Assembly: GCA_943704425.1 (NCBI GenBank)
Contig: CALSCP010002497.1
Span: 128,798 to 192,797 of the forward strand
Reading direction: 5' to 3'
Length of the DNA stretch: 64,000 bases
From: Ministeria vibrans ATCC 50519
Taxonomy: Eukaryota; Protista; Filasterea
The notes beneath the pieces were generated by a model that saw only the letters and a program-made list of their open reading frames with translations, was not told the DNA's origin and did no database searches. The position numbers and the translations under genes were made by a program. This document shows positions 29,731 to 39,100 of the stretch, in pieces (the stretch's first letter is position 1; the number at the start of each line of letters is the position of its first letter).

Positions 29731-30940
29731 ACCGCCATTTGACTAAATATGTTGTCAATGTCCTCTTGACGGATCCGCGACCGCTGTTTCTTGTCTTTCT
29801 GGATTGGCTCTGGTTGTGTCTCGGGTGCAGTGGCATTCTCTTCCGTTGCTGCTGCTTCCCCTTCTTCTGCTTCTTCGCCATCATCATCAAACCCATCGAC
29901 GGCCAATTCAGCCACAGCGCCTAGAACAAGTCGTATTGTCAATCCCATGTACAAACAGAGAGATAGATATACACTATCCGTCTTTCTCTTAATTATACCC
30001 GAATCTCTCTCTCTCTCTATCAATTTGTTTCTTTCTCCCTCCTCTCGCTCCCAGTGTGTCTCACCTGCGCCATGTTCATCGTAGACCAGTCTCGCTTGTG
30101 CATCCCCCAATACCTTAAACGCCAGTGACACTTGGTAGAACTTAATCTTTGCTTCGTTCGAGGGATTTTTGTCTGGATGGTATTTCAATGCGAGTTTTCG
30201 ATAGGCCTAACAGACAAAGGAGAGTGCGCGTGTGAGAATTCTTGCACAGAATGTCTTGTCATTTGTACCTTTTTGACTTCTTTTTGCGTTGCACTGTTGC
30301 CAATTTCCAATACCATGTAGTAACTCGGTGCATTCACTGCCTTTTTAGCATTTTCCGCCGCACGAGCAGAGCGCGCCTATAAGAAAATTGAAGTAAAACC
30401 CCTGTAATTCGAAAAGCGCGCCCTTTTTTCTTATGAATGAACTGTTCTGTTCACCTGCTGTCTCATTTGCTCTTTTTGCTCCTCCGTCATGTTAACTTCG
30501 AGTCCGTGGATGGCTGCACGAGCAGAGCCGGTGGACGCCACATCGATTGGTGTCTGTCCCTTTCTGCAATGGTGCACATCAGTCCGTCATTTTCATTCGC
30601 CTCTGTCTCTCCTGTCGTCTCTCTCTTTTCGTTACCTATCTTTGATTGCCATGTTTGCACCCGATTTGATGAGTGCCGTGATGGCTTTGAGTTGGTTGTT
30701 TTTGGAAGCGTAGTGAAGAGGTGTCATTCCAGCATCGTCGCAGGCAGAGACATTGGCCTTGAACTTGGCCAGCAAACAGATGAGCTGTTCGTTGTCGGCT
30801 TCCGCTGCATAGTGCAGCGGCGTTTTGCCATTGGGACCCACTGCATCAACATTGGCACATGCCTTGTCCAGTAGAAACCTAGTCACATCTTCGTTCTTCT
30901 CAAGAACCGCAAGGTGTAGCGCAGTCTCATCCATGGATGT

Positions 30941-31029
<89 letters not shown>

Positions 31030-31050
31030 AAGGAGAGGGAAAGAACAAAG

Positions 31051-31145
<95 letters not shown>

Positions 31146-31178
31146 AACAAGTGATAGAGAGAGAGAGAAAGAAACAAG

Positions 31179-31276
<98 letters not shown>

Positions 31277-31292
31277 GAGGGAAAGAACAAAG

Positions 31293-31362
<70 letters not shown>

Positions 31363-31949
31363 GATCGAAAGAAAGTTAGTGCATTCCAGTTGGGCTCAAA
31401 GCAGCGGCGCACACCCACGCCACTCGGACACTATCCTCGGAGCAGTGTCCTCGGGCACGGTGCGGGCAAAGGAAAGAGCGATCGAGCGCGATACGGATGA
31501 TCTCGTCTGAGGGTATACGTCACCGATAAGCCCCTCAGCGCGCGTCGCGACACTCTCCCGTACTGGGCGGAAACTGGGTCTCTCGGCGATAAGCAGCTGC
31601 TCATACACAGTACAGCGCAGCATGCCAATGCCGCGGCAACGTGCGAGCGACTGTGGGAGCGCCTGTACAGGCGAGACTGGGACACAACAGGGGATGCTTT
31701 GTCGGTTTTTTTTTTTATAGATTTCACCTTAACAGTCGCATCGGCTCCAGAATCAAGCAAAAACTCGGCCATGAAGGCGTCGCCCTTCTCGGCAGCGATA
31801 TGGAGTGCATTCTTTCCCGACGAGTCTTTTTCGTTCACGTCAATCGGAACAATTTTACGCAATGTCAATTTTGGACGGTAAGTGATCATCTTCTTCGCCT
31901 CGTGCACATCGCCGCGGCGAACAGCCGCAAAAAACTCCTTTCTACCCAT
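29407..31949 (-). CDS. Ankyrin-repeat + DnaJ (J-domain) protein, 7 exons
   Basis: Ankyrin repeats ([34 protein letters not shown]); J domain YYMVLEI...[18 protein letters not shown]; exons join in phase. Confidence 0.88.
30945..31354. repeat. Interrupted (GA)n array in intron 1 of the Ank-DnaJ gene
   Basis: GA tracts separated by repeated AA(A)GTGATAG-containing spacers. Confidence 0.97.
31381..31697 (-). ncRNA. Candidate structured intronic RNA (~320 nt), family unidentified
   Basis: GC-rich non-coding island in intron 30941-31727 with at least 7 manually found helices; G-U wobbles mostly favour the minus strand. Confidence 0.45.
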
Positions 31950-32181: not shown

Positions 32182-35100
32182 TTATAATACAAGGGTGTCC
32201 ACCCCCCAAGTGTGCTCGGTGAGATCGGCGCTGGCGGCGGGCGCACCATCCTCGGGCGGAGCGTAGTGCTCCATTCGCTTGGTAAACACCGCCTTTAGAT
32301 CGGTCACCTGCACGGGTGGACGATTGATCGAGTCGTCGGGGAGTGAACGCTCGCTCAATGGTCTCAGGGCGCCTCGTCCCAACTTGAGCGCCGTCTCGTT
32401 GGGCACTCGCAAAGAAGACGTCTTGGGAGATGAAAGGGTACGAAGCGCACTTCGCCCCTGCTTGACATCGACAGTTGATGCCAGAGGACCTCCAGTGGAG
32501 GTCAAAGAAGCCTTGGACTCACCCAAGGGAGCGCGTGCGCGAGCACGCTGGCGAATGGGCACACCAGCATTCTCGTTGTTGCTTGCTGAAGCGGGTGGAG
32601 GCGGAGGTGGCGGAGGTCCAGCGGAAGAAGATGATGGGGTACCGCTTCGAGGGTGCAATGCCAAGGAAAGAGGATGGTGAACTGCCGTGGAGGGTGTCAG
32701 AGACACTGTTTGAAACTAAAGGAGCAAAAAAATGAGTATAATTATTTGGTTTTTCTTTTCTTTTTATCATTTTACCTTTGGTGCTTTGGGCGAGCGCAAT
32801 GCCGATGTGGATGTGGATGTGGATGCGGATGTGGATGTGGTCTCGCGTGGTCGGGCTTGACGAGGTGGAGATGCCATTGGCACTGACTTGGGTGCAGTGG
32901 CATTAGAGAACTCACGCACAACCGACTCGGTGATGCGCTTGACAGTGGCGGGTGAGGCACAAGGGTGAGCTCCGGCGGCCTCGGCGAGTGCGGCGGCACG
33001 CACCTGCTCCACGAGAGCGGCAACATTGAGACGGCGAGGGTGAAGGAAGTCGTGGTTGAGCAGGTGGGGGATAGTGGCACGCTGACGCGGATTGCGGTTG
33101 AGACATTGTTGGATGGTGTCGACAAGGGCCGGGTCGGAACCTGCTGGGTACGCAATGGCATGACGGGGGTTGCAGATGGCATTGATCTTCTTCATAAACT
33201 TAAGTGAGTGGAACGGGGTTGCACCGTACGCCATGCTGTACAGAATGCATCCGAGTGACCACACGTCGCTTGGACGGCCCACCTTGAACTGCTTGCTCTT
33301 GCTGCTGCTGCACTCGGTGTCTTGGAACGTCTCGGGAGCCATGTAGTTCAGTGTACCCATTGCATCCTCGCGCATCACCGACGTGTGCTCATCCTGCAGT
33401 GCCTCGGCAATGCCAAAGTCAATCAGCTTGAGCTTCTCGCCCACCACCACAAAGTTGGCGGGCTTCAAGTCACTGTGGATAATCTCATGTTCGTGAACCG
33501 CATGCACCGCCTCGAGCATCTGGCGCCAGTACACGCGCAATTGATTCTCGTCGAGTCGCTTGGGTTGACGCAGTACCGTCTGCAGGTCCAAACTGCCACA
33601 CTCCATCACCACGTACACATGCGTGTCGGTGATTTCCGAGTTGTACAGGCGGATCACCGAGTCGCAGTGTTGCAGTTTCTCGAGCAGACCAATCTCCGCC
33701 ATGTATTTTTGACGTGTGCTTGACTCGCTGTCCTCCAGTTTAACCCGCTTAAGCGCATACACATTGCGATCCTCTCCCAGCACACGATAGACAACACTCG
33801 AGCCGCCTTTGCCGACCTCCTTGAGCACCGTGTAGCGCTGTCCACTCACCACAATTTGGTTGGCGTCGTCCTGCGCAACGGCAGCAGCAGCAGCAGCAGC
33901 AGCAACAGTAGTGGAGCGAGGAGCCACTGCGGCAGAAGCAGAGGCAGCCGCTGGTGGTACAGCTACTGTCTCGGTGTGTCGTGTGGGAACGACAACAGCG
34001 GCAATGGGGTCTGCCTTGAAGGAGATGGCTGCCGTTGAGATAGTCGAATCGGAGGGTTCGGTTGCGCGCGCAGGGTCCATCACAACAGTTGCCGTGTCGT
34101 GAGTTGGAGGCGCCCCGTCCACAACTGTCTTGTTTGTTTCGGAAAGAACCGTCTTGGGAGTGTTGGGAGCGTTGCGAAAGCTGATCAGGTCCATGGTCTC
34201 GTCGTAGGTGGAGGTGGGAGGCACGGAGGCCGTTTCGGAGGGGACATTAGATGAAGAGGCAGGTGCGGTGATGAGCGTGTCGTGGTCAGTGTCGTCAGAG
34301 TCGGTAGTGCGCACGGCACGACCCAGTTGTAGGCCTGTGGTGCGCCCCGCCAGACGACGCGGCTTCTTGCGCGTTGAAACTGTAGCGGGTAGTCTGAAGG
34401 CTGTAGTGGTGTCGTCAAGGATGGGAGATGAGGCAGAGGAAGAGCGCGACGACGATTGTGACGATTGCGACGATGAGTAGGAGGACGAGGAGGAGGTGGA
34501 GTGGACACTCGAGTTGGGTGTGCTGGCATCACTCACGCTGCTACTGTTACTGCTGCTCCTGCTGCTGCTACTGCTGCTGTTGCTGCTGTTGCTATTGTTG
34601 GTGCCGGGAGTTTGATGAAAGGCGGTGTCGAGCGAGAAGGAGACGGTGTGTTGTGGCTGAAGGGTGATGGTGGCCGTGGAGGTGGGGGTCGCCGGGACGA
34701 GTGCTGCTGCTCCTGTTGTCGTTGTTGTTGTTGATGATGTCGACTCGGCCGTGTTGGTCACGAGTGCCGTGTGATACTGTGTAGGCTCTTCGGCGGGTGT
34801 AAGGGGCCCGCGTGAACCGTCCTCGTAGACACAAGGGAAGTCGGTCAGCTCGAGGATAGTGTCTGTCGTAGCCGATGTGATCCGCTGCATTGCGGTGCTG
34901 ATGAGAGCCGTTGGCTGGGCTCCAGCGTCGAGACCCGCCTTGAGGTATTGGTAGGCTTTGGCACCGCCTGCACTAAGCTCCAGCTGTGCACGTGACACGT
35001 AGAAGCGTGCCATGCCAAGGGCAATCTTGCAGTTGAGCAGCAACTTAAAGAGGTCGCGCGCCTCCTCAAAGCCACAGTGTTCGTTGCGTGCAATCGCCGA

Positions 35101-35962
35101 TTGTATCTCACAGTGAGCAAGGAAAATGCGCACTGCGTCTTCATCCTTGCGCCAGGCGTCCGCGTCAAAGCACGAAGTGCATGCGTCGTGGAGCTTGCCC
35201 ATGTAGCGCAAGTGCCAGTCATAGAGTCGGGTGCGACCATATTCACTCTCCAGCAGCACCAGCCACTCGCTCGTTCCCGAAAGCGACCGCGTCTTCATCT
35301 GAATCTTGACCCATTCAACCTTCCACGGCACAACAGCCGTGCTGCTCTTCTTGGCGCTCTTAGGCCGGCTCGTCTGAAAATAATACAATAACAAAAACAA
35401 AAAACGCGAACAGTGAGAATTTCAAATAGGCTACAGGCGTTTATCAACTTTGATGACGCACAATAATGTACGCGCTAAAGTGTGGATGCAAAACTCGCCG
35501 TAAACGTCCATGCAATGTCCATTTGGGACATGCAAAAAAATAATTCCATTACAATTGACGAACAATGAAATTTCACACAAACTGCGCCGTTAATGGCAAA
35601 TTAATCCCCAACATGGCATTTAACATTGAGGTACACGTGTCATGAAGGCAATAGAAAGCGAAAAAGAGAGCAAATATTTCCAAGATTGTGAAAGTTTTTT
35701 TTTTTGTGTTTTGTTGTGTGGTCGTTGCTATGTTTGCTTTTCTGTCCACCGTGACCGTATTTCCACCCATTCGCATGTCTATGACACTTCCATCTGAATA
35801 TTACACGCTGATGCATGGGCAGCGGCAGCCACGGGCCTTTACCTTTCGTTGGCTCTGGCTTGGAGTCGAAATTGAGTCCGTTTGAGTTCGGCGCAAAATG
35901 CTGATTTGTTCTCGCAGATTTGAGAGCGCGTCAACCGGCTTAGCATCACCAGCACCACTCAT
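32182..35962 (-). CDS. TTK: Mps1/TTK dual-specificity kinase with N-terminal TPR domain and a C-terminal extension exon, 3 exons
   Basis: Exons 35962-35843, 35373-32776, 32715-32182 (all phase 0); GKGGSSVVY, YALKRV, IHSDLKPANF, KLIDFGIA, GTLNYMAPE, SDVWSLGCILY; TPR domain ending in GAQP. Confidence 0.92.
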
Positions 35963-36143: not shown

Positions 36144-39100
36144 ATGGACGCCATTTCAGTATCTGTGCGTGTACGACCGTTGAATCAAAGCGAGCTCAAC
36201 AATGGCCAAGGCTCAACTTGGCAGCTCAACAACGACTCGATCACTCAGTGTGACGCTTCAGGTACAGCTTACAGCCTGTGCGACATAGAAACAGTTGTCC
36301 CCTATATGCAGCATGGCTATTGGGAGGGAATGCAACGATGCACCATGAGTTGTTCTCGTTCTTGGCATTGCCGGCATTTTTCAAAAAATTCAAATCGAAC
36401 ATATCAAAATCTGTCTTGACGCGCTACAAGCAACGTTTCGTTTGCCTCCTGCACAACGTTTTGTCCATAGTAGACATCCCTATTGGCGCCATATGTAGAG
36501 AAAATGTAGAGCGAGTCTGAACAAAGATGTCAGAAAGTTAACACTATCACACACACAACACACACAACACACATCCCCCTATCCTTGTCTTTGCCGCCAA
36601 GCCTCAACCTCAAATAGTGTACTAAAGGGGGTCTGGTGCAGTGCTTGGCACAGTCTGATTGCGTCTGTTCATGAAGCAATGATTTGAACTATCCAACAAC
36701 GCGTTTTTTTTTCCGCTATTTTGAATGGCTCTCATTTGAAACTGTGACTACAAGAGGCCCTGCCCTTCAGCGCACATGAACAAAACATACATGTGTCAAC
36801 ATTTGAAACGGACGGAATCTTGTTTTAACGCGTAGGAAAACCAATGAAGCCGTCGACGTTTCGTTTCGATCACATTTTCGGAACCAACAGCCGCACTCTG
36901 GTAGAAGAAGAAAAAAAAACGCGAGAGAGAAAGAGAGAGAGAGAGGTTTTAACACGCAACGTTTTATGTAGGACGTTTACAACACGGTGGCGGGTGACCT
37001 TGTTTCGTCGGCCATGAATGGCGTCAACGGCACCATCTTCGCCTACGGCCAGGTACAAAACCCATCTCCAATGACTCATCGTCCTGATGTTTCGTCTGAT
37101 GTTTACTTCTCTCTTTTTTTTTTTATCTCTTGCAGACGTCGAGTGGAAAGACATTCACCATGGGTGGCACATCAAGTGAAATGGGAATTATTCCTCTTGC
37201 TATTCAAGATGTGTTCCGGTATAGCTCATTACGCAAACAACAACAAAAAACGTGAATATGCATTCAAACTGTCTTCGTTGTTGTACTTTTCATTTTGTTT
37301 ACAGTCATATCAGTGCCTCGCCCGACCGCGAGTTTCTTTTGCGCGTTTCGTACCTTGAATTGTACAATGAGGTATCCACCGAAAATGTTGAGACCAAGTA
37401 GATATTGAAATTTTTGTACCACTAGGTCATTTCGGATCTTCTTGTGCCAAGCAGTACCAATCTCAAGATTCGCTTGAGTGCCAACGGCGACAACTGCGTG
37501 ACGGATCTCAGCGAAGAGGTTGTGGTGTCACCGCAGCAGATTCTGGAGCTGATGCGATTGGGCGAGAAGAACCGACACACGGGCAAGACAAACATGAACG
37601 AGCGAAGCAGTCGGTCGCACACCGTCTTCCGCATGGTCATTGAGAGCCGAGCGGTCAAGGGAGATGGTGACAGTGCCTCGACTGAAAGTGATGCTGGTAG
37701 CACGGTGGGTGTGCCTGCGGCGGACCGACTCAGTGGCGACGGCGGAGCAGTGCTGGTGAGCACACTCAACCTGGTGGATCTTGCGGGTAGCGAGCGTTCC
37801 TCGCAGACGGGCGCTGAGGGAGTGCGTCTTAAGGAGGGCAGCAGCATTAACAAGAGTTTGTTGACGCTGGGCATGGTCATCCGTGAGCTCAGCGAGGGCA
37901 CTGGCGCCGAGCATATTCCCTATCGCAACTCCAAATTGACGCGCATCCTCCAGTCGAGTCTGGGTGGCAATGCACGCACCAGCATCGTCTGTACCATCTC
38001 GCCGGCATTTGAGAACGCCGAACAGACGTTGGGCACGCTTCGCTTTGCAACGGGCGCTAAGACAGTGAAAAACAAGCCCATTGTGAACGAAGTGCGCACC
38101 GACGAGACACAGCTGCGACGCTACGAGACCATGATTGCCGATCTGCGTCGCCAACTGGAGGAGCGCCGCAAACCCAAGCGTGACGAGGTGGTCAAGGTAC
38201 AGGAGCACAACGAGGCGCTGCAACAGGAGCTGCGCGAGCGCGAGAAGGAACTCACCGAGCAGGCGGCCAAAATCGAACGCTTTAAGAAGCTCTTTTTGGT
38301 CGGCAGTGCGGTCAACCCAGAGATGGGCCAGGCCGTCTCGGCCGAGCTGGGCACAACAGTCATTCCTGCTGGCACTGCTTCCGCCGTGACCATGGGGCTC
38401 TCGGCCAAGGCCATGAAGGATCGTCGTGGCACTTGGTTTGCCGGTGCGACCAGTCGTGCGCAGCTGGTACAACCCGCAGGAGGAGTGTCGGATTCCACTG
38501 CCGACGCCACCGATGCCAGTGCTCACTTTGCACCGCCAGCGTCGTCGCGTAGTCGTCGTTCGGGTGTGCGCCAGAGCATGGGTCCCATGCGACAGTTGCT
38601 TCAACAACAACAACAGCAGCAGCAGCAGCAGAGTAAGAGCCAGCCGCAACAACAACATCAACAACAACTGCAACCGGGCATGGCCTCTTCCAACACCTCT
38701 GTGCGCACACGCGAACTTGAACAGGAGCTTGCGGATGCCCAAGAGCAAATAAAGTGCCTTGAGGATCTGCTTGAGCGCAGCAATCAGAATCTCATGACCA
38801 CCATCGAGAAGAACGAGGCGAACATGACCCCACGACGCGTGAAGTCTCTGCGGTCGCGACTCGAGCATCTCGAGGAGTTGCACAAACAGCAAGAGGAGGC
38901 GGCGGACGTGCCTACAGGATTGGCCGCGGCAACCGTTGACCCTGAAACAGTCGCGTCGTTAGAACGTGAGAATGCTGAGCTGCGATTGCAGATGAATGAG
39001 GCGCTAGAGATTCAGGAGCTCATGACGAGCGAATCGATGCAGCTTGAGGAACAGTTGCGTGTCTCACGCGAAGCACTTGCTGCACTTGAGAAGGAAACTG

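What the first reader, a model, noticed from the sequence alone, without database searches (positions are those of the whole stretch)
32182..32775. Mps1 checkpoint kinase appears fused to a polyproline-WH2-WH2-C-A (Arp2/3 activator-like) tail
Seen: the kinase ORF ends at AAG|GTAAAA, and a 60-nt intron (32775-32716, TTTAG acceptor) joins it in phase 0 to a 177-aa exon. That exon carries GPPPPPPPP, a D-box-like RAPLGE, two WH2-like units (STVDVKQGRSALRTL; NETALKLGRGALRPL), an amphipathic C-like helix (DLKAVFTKRM) and an acidic stretch with a near-terminal Trp (ADLTEHTW). Established: this order defines WASP-family VCA modules, and characterised human and yeast Mps1 end shortly after the kinase domain. 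Inference: a mitotic checkpoint kinase that can itself bind actin and Arp2/3, linking kinetochore or centrosome signalling to actin nucleation. This is the best candidate in the window for an undescribed system.
Basis: partly seen in the sequence, partly recalled or inferred. Interest (0 to 1): 0.82.

Follow-up and report, generated by a model that had tools for sequence, protein, structure and literature searches.

The report
Conserved C-terminal motif tail of Mps1
The extra exon really is the last exon of the Mps1 checkpoint kinase gene, and its string of short motifs is an ancient Mps1 tail shared by starfish, green algae and apusomonads (lost in vertebrates and fungi), but no test shows it to be an actin/Arp2/3 activator.

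Summary
Observation confirmed. On the minus strand the kinase ORF ends at AAG|GTAAAA (32776/32775). A 60-nt GT..AG intron (32775-32716) joins it in phase 0 to a 177-codon exon (32715-32185, TAA 32184-32182), and all the listed motifs are there.

The exon has no usable ATG and coding-like GC content. Its motif order recurs at the C-terminus of about 25 distant TTK/Mps1 orthologues: echinoderms, hemichordates, Thecamonas, trebouxiophyte and prasinophyte green algae, and metagenome transcripts. So the tail belongs to Mps1 and is ancient, not a lineage-specific fusion. A major Mps1 review does not describe it.

The WH2-WH2-C-A reading is not supported as family membership:
- Pfam WH2 finds six real WH2s in this genome but not this tail, nor 14 orthologue sequences scanned.
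- Profile tests against real WH2/VCA sequences stay within shuffle range.
- The "acidic" stretch has 3-5 acidic residues per 20, against 7-10 in real VCAs.

Yet the grammar (polyPro, helix+L-K-x-V, basic helix, Trp near the end) is conserved. A protein language model ranks VCA fragments second for two divergent tails, which is a weak lead.

The two "WH2-like" units also fit the D-box pattern and are this protein's only exposed D-box candidates. My best reading is a regulatory degron/docking tail with an unknown partner.

The parts
35843..35962 (-). Putative exon 1 of the Mps1 gene (40 codons, ATG at 35962-35960), ending AAG|GTAAAG
   Evidence: Read. It is in phase 0 with exon 2 and lies 181 nt from the divergent kinesin (CENP-E-like) ATG at 36144. 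This is an inference: there is no homology support for these 40 residues.
35374..35842 (-). Intron 1 (469 nt), GT..AG, acceptor TTATTTTCAG
   Evidence: Its donor, GTAAAG, resembles the intron 2 donor, GTAAAA.
32776..35373 (-). Exon 2: N-terminal TPR-like region, long Ser/Thr/Ala-rich middle, kinase domain and the conserved post-kinase helices
   Evidence: Pfam on the ORF translation from 35400: Pkinase at residues 523-786, 196 bits; a weak Mad3_BUB1_I match at residues 70-156, 18.9 bits, below the 31.4-bit cut-off. All best hits are TTK/Mps1.
33043..33834 (-). Protein kinase domain
   Evidence: Pfam PF00069, E 9.7e-58. It is 47-52% identical to TTK of animals and protists.
32716..32775 (-). 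Intron 2 (60 nt), donor AAG|GTAAAA, acceptor CTCCTTTAG|; if retained, it adds Val-Lys and a TGA stop (32769-32767)
   Evidence: GC dips to 0.46-0.47. Orthologues encoded by uninterrupted ORFs run straight from the kinase into the same tail motifs. No transcript evidence was available.
32185..32715 (-). Exon 3: 177-residue disordered C-terminal tail carrying the conserved motif cassette; stop TAA at 32182-32184
   Evidence: the profile finds only Mps1 tails; single copy in this genome.
32593..32619 (-). Polyproline run G-P8 (exon residues 33-41)
   Evidence: Pro-rich runs recur upstream of the cassette in P0007, P0123, P0124, P0008, P0012 and P0175.
32518..32535 (-). R-A-P-L-G-E (residues 61-66): local form of the conserved R-x-P-L motif
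   Evidence: In animals and trebouxiophytes the motif reads R-x-P-L-x-x-[VIL] and fits the D-box pattern. Here position 7 is Ser, so the pattern is incomplete.
32434..32478 (-). Unit 1, STVDVKQGRSALRTL (residues 80-94): duplicate of unit 2; contains RSALRTL
   Evidence: It matches R..L..[LIVM]. Orthologues align to unit 2 only.
32356..32400 (-). Unit 2, NETALKLGRGALRPL (residues 106-120): the conserved helix + A-L-[KR]-[PKR]-[VL] unit; contains RGALRPL
   Evidence: It lines up without gaps with about 20 orthologues. There is no Pfam WH2 match. hhalign against 7 real WH2s gives P 0.095, and 33 of 300 column shuffles score as high.
32263..32301 (-). Amphipathic basic helix DLKAVFTKRMEHY (residues 139-151)
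   Evidence: Conserved as [DNS]-L-x-x-[VA]-[LFM]-x-x-x-[LIM]-x-x-[KRH]. The equivalent Thecamonas segment is predicted helical, residues 946-962, pLDDT 66-74.
32206..32229 (-). ADLTEHTW (residues 163-170): Ser/Thr-rich, mildly acidic stretch ending in the conserved [DE]-x-[ST]-W, 7 residues from the C-terminus
   Evidence: Trp lies within 1-7 residues of the end in all 12 tails measured; Phe replaces it in Coccomyxa. There are 3-5 acidic residues in the 20 before Trp, against 7-10 in real VCAs.

Best explanation
The region is the last exon of a three-exon Mps1/TTK gene. It encodes an intrinsically disordered C-terminal tail whose short linear motifs form an ancient, so far undescribed Mps1 cassette.

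The cassette, in order:
1. A Pro-rich stretch.
2. R-x-P-L.
3. A short helix ending in A-L-[KR]-[PKR]-[VL], duplicated in this organism.
4. A spacer of about 20 residues, holding a KEN box in several lineages but not here.
5. A basic amphipathic helix.
6. A Ser/Thr-rich, mildly acidic stretch.
7. [DE]-x-[ST]-W close to the C-terminus.

Shown here: the splice geometry, the coding character, and conservation of the motif order across Obazoa and green algae, with loss in vertebrates, chytrid fungi and others.

Inferred: the tail acts as a regulatory and docking module, not as a member of the WH2/VCA family.
- The R-x-P-L motif and the two R-x-A-L-R-x-L units act as D-box-type APC/C degrons. They are the only exposed D-box candidates in this protein, and Mps1 is a known APC/C substrate in yeast and human.
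- The helix plus Trp end is a docking element for a partner not yet identified. It may be switched by phosphorylation of the Ser/Thr just before the Trp, which sits in an acidic-at-minus-2 context like Mps1's own MELT-type sites (the site preference is from my own knowledge).
For: Splice and frame:
- Searches give the junctions, the phase and the matching donor of the other intron.
- One search shows the coding-like GC content.
- The exon has no start codon of its own.

Identity of the kinase:
- Pfam kinase domain plus a weak TPR match; all best hits are TTK.

Conservation of the tail:
- Ordered motifs recur in P0003, P0007, P0050, P0030 (Thecamonas), P0062 (Coccomyxa), P0008 (Patiria) and others.
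- After a second orthologue search they also appear in Chloropicon, Elliptochloris, Myrmecia, Chlorella, Auxenochlorella, Cymbomonas, P0224, P0230 and P0214.
- A profile of five tails, run against 1.84 billion representative proteins, returns 7 hits: 5 Mps1 tails or fragments, one apparently low-complexity hit and one repeat protein. No WASP-family protein is among them.
- The cassette is single-copy in this genome.

D-box reading:
- R..L..[LIVM] occurs 11 times in 14 tails against 1.7 expected from shuffles.
- It occurs in 15 of 25 tails, and 0 of 1000 shuffles reach that number.
- In this protein the only hits outside the kinase fold are RSALRTL and RGALRPL, and there is no KEN box.
- KEN follows the unit in five orthologues.
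- Human Mps1 is degraded by APC/C through a D-box at residues 256-263 (PMC3094359). Yeast Mps1 is degraded through three D-boxes (PMC3458821).

Other:
- The AlphaFold2 model of Thecamonas Mps1 puts two short helices exactly at the two conserved tail elements in an otherwise low-confidence tail.
- The review PMC6119859 lists only NTE, TPR, MR and kinase as Mps1 modules.
Against: - The D-box position-1 Arg is not conserved in the helix+A-L-K unit. It is Arg in about 6 of 22 orthologues and His, Gln, Ala or Lys in the rest. The basic residue after the Leu is conserved, which is not a D-box feature. So degron function cannot be the unit's only or ancestral role.
- The local R-A-P-L lacks the hydrophobic position 7.
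- Two prasinophyte-type tails (P0124, P0050) have neither a strict D-box nor a KEN box.
- The shuffle tests show that a pattern is conserved among related sequences, not that it is a degron. The same test is equally positive for a WH2-type pattern.
- No partner is identified for the helix/Trp end.
- There is no transcript evidence for the splice.
- I could not inspect the AlphaFold model for contacts.
Confidence: 0.5

Rival explanations
1. The tail works like a WASP-family VCA module. The helix+L-K-x-V unit or units bind G-actin, and the basic helix plus the Trp end bind Arp2/3. That would make ancestral Mps1 a nucleation-promoting factor, possibly switched on by phosphorylation of the Ser/Thr-rich 'A' region.
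For: - The order and spacing are conserved: polyPro, helix+L-[KR]-[PKR]-[VL], roughly 20 residues, amphipathic basic helix, Trp 1-7 residues from the end.
- Several algal orthologues carry canonical-looking ALKKV, ALRKV, ALKRV or KLNKV. Elliptochloris DIQAGRAALKRV differs from this genome's own WAVE WH2 core, QIRAGRTLRKV, mainly by one inserted residue.
- Real WH2s also vary in this linker, as in L003 and P0127.
- Prasinophyte-type Mps1 proteins have an extra unit with WH2 spacing right after polyPro.
- hhalign puts unit and WH2, and helix and WAVE C region, in the intuitive register.
- ESM Atlas ranks a WHAMM-like WH2 cluster second for the window tail (0.77) and for the P0003 tail (0.79).
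Against: - Pfam WH2 detects the positive controls (26.9 and 15.5 bits). It detects none of the 5 tail segments and 10 full-length or fragment orthologue proteins scanned at E<=10, nor this locus in a six-frame scan of the genome.
- No WH2 or WASP chain appears at E<=10 in a PDB sequence search with the tail profile.
- hhalign of tails against VCAs gives probability 0.26%.
- hhalign of the unit against real WH2s gives P 0.095, and 33 of 300 column shuffles score as high.
- A helix-to-Trp HMM scores 4 real VCAs no better than their shuffles.
- A WH2 HMM scores the units at p 0.02 to 1.
- The 'A' region has 3-5 acidic residues per 20 against 7-10 in real VCAs, and the residue before Trp is Thr, Ser or Ala rather than Asp or Glu.
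- Both Atlas scores are below the tool's 0.9 lead threshold.
- No paper links Mps1 to WH2 or VCA.
Confidence: 0.15
2. The tail is an intramolecular regulator. The conserved helices and the Trp fold back on the kinase domain or on the N-terminal TPR domain, to autoinhibit or to position the kinase, and are released by autophosphorylation.
For: - The C-terminal helix of the Thecamonas model has a higher pLDDT (66-74) than helices predicted in the disordered middle region (about 30-53).
- Ser/Thr in an acidic-at-minus-2 context flank the Trp.
- Regulation of human MPS1 by interactions between its own N-terminal modules is known; this point is from my own knowledge.
Against: - The tool gives no contacts or PAE, so docking could not be checked.
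- A pLDDT of 56-74 is also what an undocked amphipathic helix gets.
- A non-kinase ORF (P0126) carries five tandem copies of the same unit, which points to a partner acting in trans.
Confidence: 0.15
3. The downstream ORF is not part of Mps1, being either a separate gene or non-coding, and the motifs are chance matches in low-complexity sequence.
For: There are no transcript data. The tail is compositionally biased (Pro, Ser, Ala, Arg).
Against: - It is in frame across a canonical 60-nt GT..AG intron and has no ATG of its own.
- Its GC content is that of coding sequence.
- The same ordered motifs lie at the end of uninterrupted Mps1 ORFs in distant organisms.
- HMMs of the two elements hit only Mps1 C-termini among 233 collected proteins, with E down to 1e-18.
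Confidence: 0.03

Closest known systems
Mps1/TTK dual-specificity checkpoint kinase (human TTK, yeast Mps1/Mph1)
   Same: It has the kinase domain (47-52% identity to animal and protist TTK), a weak N-terminal Bub1/BubR1-like TPR, a long disordered middle, and the pair of helices just after the kinase that vertebrate TTK also keeps.
   Different: It carries a further tail of roughly 140 residues with the conserved cassette. Vertebrate, chytrid, Creolimax, red-algal and other sampled TTKs end 45-70 residues after the kinase. The review PMC6119859 does not list such a module.
APC/C degrons (D-box R-x-x-L-x-x-[LIVM], KEN box) as used by yeast and human Mps1
   Same: The R-x-P-L-x-x-[VIL] motif and the local R-S-A-L-R-T-L and R-G-A-L-R-P-L fit the D-box pattern. 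A KEN box follows in echinoderm, crinoid, octopus and two prasinophyte-type tails.
   Different: The known Mps1 D-boxes lie N-terminal to the kinase (PMC3094359, PMC3458821). Here they lie in the C-terminal tail. The position-1 Arg of the helix unit is not conserved across orthologues, and the window itself has no KEN box.
WASP-family VCA module (WH2, central helix, acidic stretch with Trp), e.g. this genome's own WAVE (L004:1501-1776) and a Basidiobolus WASP (P0127)
   Same: The order, rough spacing and position at the extreme C-terminus match, a polyPro run precedes it, the helix+L-[KR]-x-[VL] pattern and a basic amphipathic helix are present, and a Trp lies near the end.
   Different: There is no Pfam WH2 match. 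The helix is separated from the L-K-x-V by one extra residue compared with WASP-type WH2s. Pro is common at the third position of L-K-x-V. The stretch before Trp is only mildly acidic and Ser/Thr-rich, and Trp is preceded by Thr, Ser or Ala. No profile-level similarity exceeds shuffles.

Membership tests
Mps1/TTK kinase | Protein kinase domain whose closest relatives are TTK/Mps1 | tested here: met
   Pfam Pkinase at 196 bits. The best 120 hits listed are almost all named TTK/Mps1 or unnamed, with E down to 1e-133.
Mps1/TTK kinase | N-terminal Bub1/BubR1-like TPR domain (ancestral, lost in many lineages) | tested here: inconclusive
   PF08311 scores 18.9 bits at residues 70-156, below the 31.4-bit cut-off. 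Orthologues with the same tail carry PF08311.
WH2 domain (Pfam PF02205) | Match to the WH2 profile at or near the curated cut-off (23.1 bits) | tested here: not met
   The exon has no match at E<=10. A six-frame scan of the whole genome finds 6 WH2s elsewhere and none here. Four other tail segments, P0123 and P0126 are negative while the controls L004 and L006 score 26.9 and 15.5 bits. Nine more full-length orthologues are negative.
WH2 domain (Pfam PF02205) | Amphipathic helix followed by an L-K-K-[VT]-type motif | tested here: inconclusive
   The pattern is present and conserved, and reads ALKKV, ALRKV or ALKRV in some algae. It has one extra linker residue, and profile similarity to 7 real WH2s is not above shuffles (33 of 300).
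WASP-family VCA | Central (C) amphipathic helix similar to WASP/WAVE C regions | tested here: inconclusive
   hhalign aligns the two helices, but at probability 0.26% and E 0.23. The helix-to-Trp HMM scores 4 real VCAs no better than their shuffles. With only 4 real VCAs available, power is low.
WASP-family VCA | Strongly acidic stretch with a Trp at the extreme C-terminus | tested here: not met
   The Trp is conserved near the end, but there are only 3-5 acidic residues in the 20 before it, against 7-10 in three real VCAs. The residue before Trp is Thr, Ser, Ala or Glu.
WASP-family VCA | Binds G-actin and Arp2/3 and stimulates nucleation | not testable with these tools
   This needs biochemistry or multi-chain structure prediction. 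The structure tool folds single chains only.
APC/C D-box degron | R-x-x-L-x-x-[LIVM] in an accessible, disordered region | tested here: met
   RSALRTL and RGALRPL lie in the tail, 2 hits against 0.24 expected, p 0.02. They are the only hits outside the kinase fold.
APC/C D-box degron | Conservation of the essential Arg and Leu across orthologues | tested here: inconclusive
   The Leu is essentially invariant. The Arg of the helix unit is present in about 6 of 22 orthologues. The Arg of the upstream R-x-P-L motif is conserved in animals and trebouxiophytes.
APC/C D-box degron | APC/C- and motif-dependent ubiquitination or degradation | not testable with these tools
   This is known for human and yeast Mps1 through D-boxes placed elsewhere in the protein (PMC3094359, PMC3458821).

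The most novel reading that the evidence does not exclude
The ancestral eukaryotic Mps1 carried a functional WH2-C-A-type module at its C-terminus. This module is still present in this organism, in starfish, apusomonads and green algae, and was lost in vertebrates and fungi. It would let the checkpoint kinase recruit G-actin and activate Arp2/3 at kinetochores or spindle poles, with the Ser/Thr-rich stretch before the terminal Trp made acidic by Mps1's own phosphorylation.
Probability: 0.13. Interest if true: 0.92.

Novelty: new variant of a known kind. Interest (0 to 1): 0.55.

Why it matters
Mps1 is the apex kinase of the spindle checkpoint, and its modules (NTE, TPR, MR, kinase) have been defined almost entirely in human and yeast, the two kinds of lineage that lack this tail.

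A motif cassette conserved from animals and apusomonads to green algae implies a partner or control step of ancestral Mps1 that work in model organisms has missed. Candidates are APC/C-driven turnover through C-terminal degrons, a phospho-switched docking site, or, least likely but most striking, a link to actin and Arp2/3.

The question is directly testable. Patiria miniata, a standard oocyte-meiosis model, carries the full cassette.

Tried and rejected
1. Single-sequence phmmer of the exon against the first 120 TTK hits gave only a marginal hit, E 0.02. Conservation is at the level of short motifs and became visible only by lining up the tails.
2. The exhaustive profile search of five tails against 1.84 billion representatives returned only 7 proteins. 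It is too insensitive for motif-level conservation. It missed Patiria and the trebouxiophytes, which I found later by hand, so it cannot be used to count family size.
3. A word search with this genome's WASP GBD region, meant to collect many VCAs, returned one protein. All VCA comparisons therefore rest on 4 VCAs and 7 WH2s and have low power.
4. The PDB sequence searches gave only chance hits: an ArhGAP9 PH domain, ATP synthase c and TetR.
5. Pattern tests (D-box and a WH2-type pattern recalled from memory) are both strongly enriched over shuffles. They do not discriminate, because the sequences are homologous. The recalled WH2 pattern also matched only 1 of 7 real WH2s, so I give it no weight.
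6. I considered and dropped, by eye and as poor fits, a Mad2-interaction motif, PP1 SILK/RVxF, an ABBA motif, a LIR, an NES and IR/MR tails.
7. The AlphaFold2 model of full-length Thecamonas Mps1 could not settle intramolecular docking, because no coordinates or PAE are returned.
I redid it from file references.
Exons were searched apart by reference, so no transcript search across the junction was made.
10. Literature searches for Mps1 with WH2 or with Arp2/3 and VCA found nothing relevant.
Full report
**What is in the sequence**

The gene lies on the minus strand. The long ORF 32767-35400 ends ...GCA CCA AAG GTA AAA TGA. The AAG codon ends at 32776, GT follows at 32775-32774, and the TGA is at 32769-32767. 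Sixty bases downstream the sequence reads CTCCTTTAG (AG at 32717-32716). From 32715 an open frame of 177 codons runs to TAA at 32184-32182, in phase 0 with the upstream codon.

- G-P8 at exon residues 33-41
- RAPLGE at 61-66
- STVDVKQGRSALRTL at 80-94
- NETALKLGRGALRPL at 106-120
- DLKAVFTKRM at 139-148
- ADLTEHTW at 163-170, with seven residues after the Trp

GC content is 0.59-0.64 in the exon, 0.46-0.47 over the 60-nt gap and 0.37 after the stop. The exon frame has no Met before residue 148, so it cannot be a gene of its own.

Upstream, I place a 40-codon first exon (ATG 35962-35960) that ends AAG|GTAAAG at 35843/35842. Its acceptor, TTATTTTCAG, ends at 35374. Both introns of the gene therefore share the donor AAG|GTAAA. 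The resulting model is:
- exon 1: 35962-35843
- exon 2: 35373-32776
- exon 3: 32715-32185

All searches used single exons by reference.

**The kinase**

The exon 2 ORF has a Pfam protein kinase domain at residues 523-786 (196 bits). It also has a weak match, below the cut-off, to the Bub1/BubR1-type TPR at residues 70-156. A word search with the kinase part returned 2298 proteins. The best are TTK/Mps1 of animals, Thecamonas, chytrids, Creolimax, a nucleariid and green algae, at 40-52% identity. No close relative of this organism is in the collection as a full gene model. The tail exon occurs only as a 126-residue prokaryote-style call that starts at an internal GTG (P0122).

**The key result: the tail is conserved**

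I cut the hits after the end of the kinase domain. Vertebrate, chytrid, aphelid and Creolimax proteins end 45-70 residues later. Many others continue for 140-230 residues and carry the same motifs in the same order as the window. These include:
- a Logan transcript (P0003)
- marine metagenome ORFs (P0007, P0011, P0050)
- Thecamonas trahens (P0030)
- Coccomyxa (P0062)
- the starfish Patiria miniata (P0008)
- in part, Acanthaster, Lytechinus, Ptychodera, Glandiceps, the crinoid Anneissia and Octopus

The shared order is:
1. R-x-P-L.
2. A short helix ending A-L-[KR]-P-[LV].
3. About 20 residues, often with [DE]-[KR]-E-N.
4. A helix [DNS]-L-x-x-[VA]-[LFM]-x-x-x-[LIM]-x-x-[KRH].
5. A Ser/Thr-rich, mildly acidic stretch.
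6. Trp within 1-7 residues of the C-terminus.

Three of these orthologues are uninterrupted ORFs on their contigs, and the Thecamonas tail is a single exon. In them the kinase and the tail are certainly one protein.

A second orthologue search seeded with P0011 added further cases: Chloropicon, Elliptochloris, Myrmecia, Chlorella, Auxenochlorella, Cymbomonas and several unnamed sequences (P0130, P0156, P0224, P0230, P0214). Small HMMs of the two elements hit only Mps1 C-termini among the 233 proteins collected, with E down to 1e-18 for sequences outside the training set.

The sampled haptophyte, red-algal, glaucophyte-like and some chlorophycean sequences lack the cassette. It is therefore present on both sides of most proposed eukaryote roots and has been lost repeatedly.

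In this organism the helix+A-L-R unit is duplicated. Orthologues align to the second copy. The genome has no second copy of the cassette.

The review by Pachis and Kops describes the kinase as lying near the C-terminus and lists NTE, TPR, MR and kinase as the functional modules (PMC6119859). I found no description of this tail.

**Is it a WH2-WH2-C-A module?**

Tests for family membership were negative.
- Pfam WH2 finds nothing in the exon at E<=10.
- A six-frame scan of the whole 29.7-Mb assembly with PF02205 finds six WH2s elsewhere: a WAVE, a WASP, another VCA protein and three L-K-K-T-type WH2s. It does not find this locus.
- In one Pfam run the WAVE and the other VCA scored 26.9 and 15.5 bits, while four other Mps1 tails scored nothing. 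Nine further full-length orthologues also scored nothing.
- A PDB sequence search with the tail profile gave no WH2 or WASP chain at E<=10.
- hhalign of the tails against three VCAs of this genome gave probability 0.26% and E 0.23, aligning only the two helices.
- An HMM of the helix-to-Trp part from nine orthologues scored four real VCAs no better than their own shuffles.
- An HMM of seven real WH2s scored the Mps1 units at empirical p values between 0.02 and 1.
- hhalign of 22 units against the seven WH2s gave score 7.2 and P 0.095, and 33 of 300 column-shuffled controls scored as high.
- The stretch before the Trp has 3-5 acidic residues in 20, against 7-10 in three real VCAs. The residue before Trp is Thr, Ser, Ala or Glu.

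All of these comparisons rest on few real VCAs, because my attempt to collect more returned a single protein.

- The whole grammar is conserved, including a Pro-rich run upstream in many orthologues, not just single motifs.
- In green algae the third position of L-K-x-V is Lys or Arg (ALKKV, ALRKV, ALKRV; KLNKV in P0214). Elliptochloris DIQAGRAALKRV is one inserted residue away from this genome's WAVE core QIRAGRTLRKV.
- Genuine WH2s also vary in that linker.
- Prasinophyte-type Mps1 proteins carry an additional unit with WH2-like spacing right after polyPro.
- The ESM Atlas ranked a WHAMM-like cluster, 81% of whose members carry WH2, second for the window tail (0.77) and second again for the P0003 tail (0.79). 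A cluster with 19% WH2 members ranked third for the P0003 tail. The tool states that scores under 0.9 are leads only.

I therefore keep a VCA-like function as a live minority hypothesis (about 0.13-0.15). I do not file the tail as a WH2 or VCA member.

**What else the motifs fit**

The two local units read R-S-A-L-R-T-L and R-G-A-L-R-P-L, which is the D-box pattern R-x-x-L-x-x-[LIVM].
- Across 14 tails the pattern occurs 11 times against 1.7 expected from shuffles.
- In a larger set, 15 of 25 tails have it, and 0 of 1000 shuffles reach that number.
- In animals and trebouxiophytes the match is the upstream R-x-P-L-x-x-[VIL]. In this organism, Thecamonas and Coccomyxa it is the helix unit.
- KEN follows in five tails.
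- In the window's own protein these two units are the only matches outside the kinase fold, and there is no KEN.

Mps1 is an APC/C substrate. Human Mps1 is degraded through a D-box at residues 256-263 (PMC3094359). Yeast Mps1 is degraded through three D-boxes N-terminal to the kinase (PMC3458821).

The weakness of this reading is that the Arg at D-box position 1 of the helix unit is not conserved: it is Arg in about 6 of 22 orthologues and otherwise His, Gln, Ala or Lys. The basic residue after the Leu is conserved. The unit's ancestral role is therefore not simply a D-box, and the shuffle statistics mainly reflect shared ancestry.

The end of the tail has a conserved [DE]-x-[ST]-W and many Thr. 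From my own knowledge, Mps1 prefers Thr with an acidic residue at position minus 2 (the MELT type), so autophosphorylation next to the Trp is a reasonable guess.

An AlphaFold2 model of full-length Thecamonas Mps1, built from 52 aligned orthologues, gives confident TPR and kinase domains. In the tail it predicts two helices exactly at the conserved elements, residues 913-922 (pLDDT about 56) and 946-962 (pLDDT 66-74), with the rest below 50. I could not see contacts, so fold-back on the kinase or the TPR stays open.

**Verdict**

There is a real, conserved and apparently undescribed C-terminal module with a VCA-like grammar. It fails the tests for WH2/VCA membership and fits at least as well as a degron-plus-docking tail.

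My best explanation is a regulatory tail in which D-box-type motifs control turnover and the helix/Trp end, possibly phospho-switched, docks an unknown partner (confidence 0.5). The rivals are a VCA-like actin/Arp2/3 function (0.15), an intramolecular regulator (0.15), and not part of the gene (0.03). The remainder is for functions not thought of.

For novelty I rate it a new variant of a known kind: an ordinary Mps1 orthologue carrying an ancestral tail module that studies in model organisms have not described.

The scan had listed this same stretch once before, under the same reading (s1-773280). No independent analysis was available.

Noticed in passing
L012:54-1016 (protein P0126, NCBI assembly GCA_020050275.1, 1081-nt contig): A 320-residue ORF with no kinase domain carries R-K-G-P-L-S-N-I followed by five tandem copies, about 30 residues apart, of L-x-A-G-[KR]-x-G-L-R-P-V-G. 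This is the same composite motif as the Mps1 tail unit. It suggests the unit is a portable ligand motif acting in trans. The profile E-value is borderline (3.3e-4), and there is no Pfam match and no genomic context.
   Followed up: partly
P0007, P0123, P0124, P0129, P0130 (prasinophyte-type Mps1), about 60 residues upstream of the conserved unit: Directly after a P7-P8 run these proteins have a second unit of the form K-M-x-[ML]-I-M-x-D-I-K-K-K-[KR]-x-L-[RK]-[PS]-x, with the hydrophobic and Leu spacing of a canonical WH2. Pfam WH2 does not detect it in P0123, the only one of the five that was scanned.
   Followed up: partly
window 34303-34335 (-), exon 2 of Mps1: The middle region contains G-L-Q-L-G-R-A-V-R-T-T, which resembles the two tail units (K-Q-G-R-S-A-L-R-T-L and K-L-G-R-G-A-L-R-P-L). 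It may be a third, degenerate copy or the conserved middle-region motif. I did not compare it with orthologues.
   Followed up: no
window 30880-31420: A long (GA)n/(TC)n microsatellite tract gives artefactual poly-(Leu-Ser) and poly-(Glu-Arg) ORFs on both strands. GC skew reaches up to 0.93. It lies between ankyrin-repeat ORFs of the neighbouring gene.
   Followed up: no
window 32185-32562 (protein P0122): The public protein collection holds this tail only as a 126-residue call starting at an internal GTG read as Met. This is typical of a prokaryotic gene finder run on a eukaryotic assembly, so the genome (29.7 Mb, 2860 contigs) probably has no eukaryotic gene models in the collection.
   Followed up: partly
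L006:220-2739 (-) (G000 contig C986): An 840-residue open frame starts with an actin-like segment. It continues through polyPro, a WH2 (15.5 bits), a C-like helix and D7...S-S-D-E-D-W, and then runs on for another 350 or so residues. This is a VCA placed internally rather than at the C-terminus. I used it only as a positive control.
   Followed up: no
window 35962 and 36144: The Mps1 start codon and the start of a divergent kinesin motor gene (CENP-E-like, MDAISVSVRVRPLNQSE...) are 181 nt apart, head to head.
   Followed up: partly
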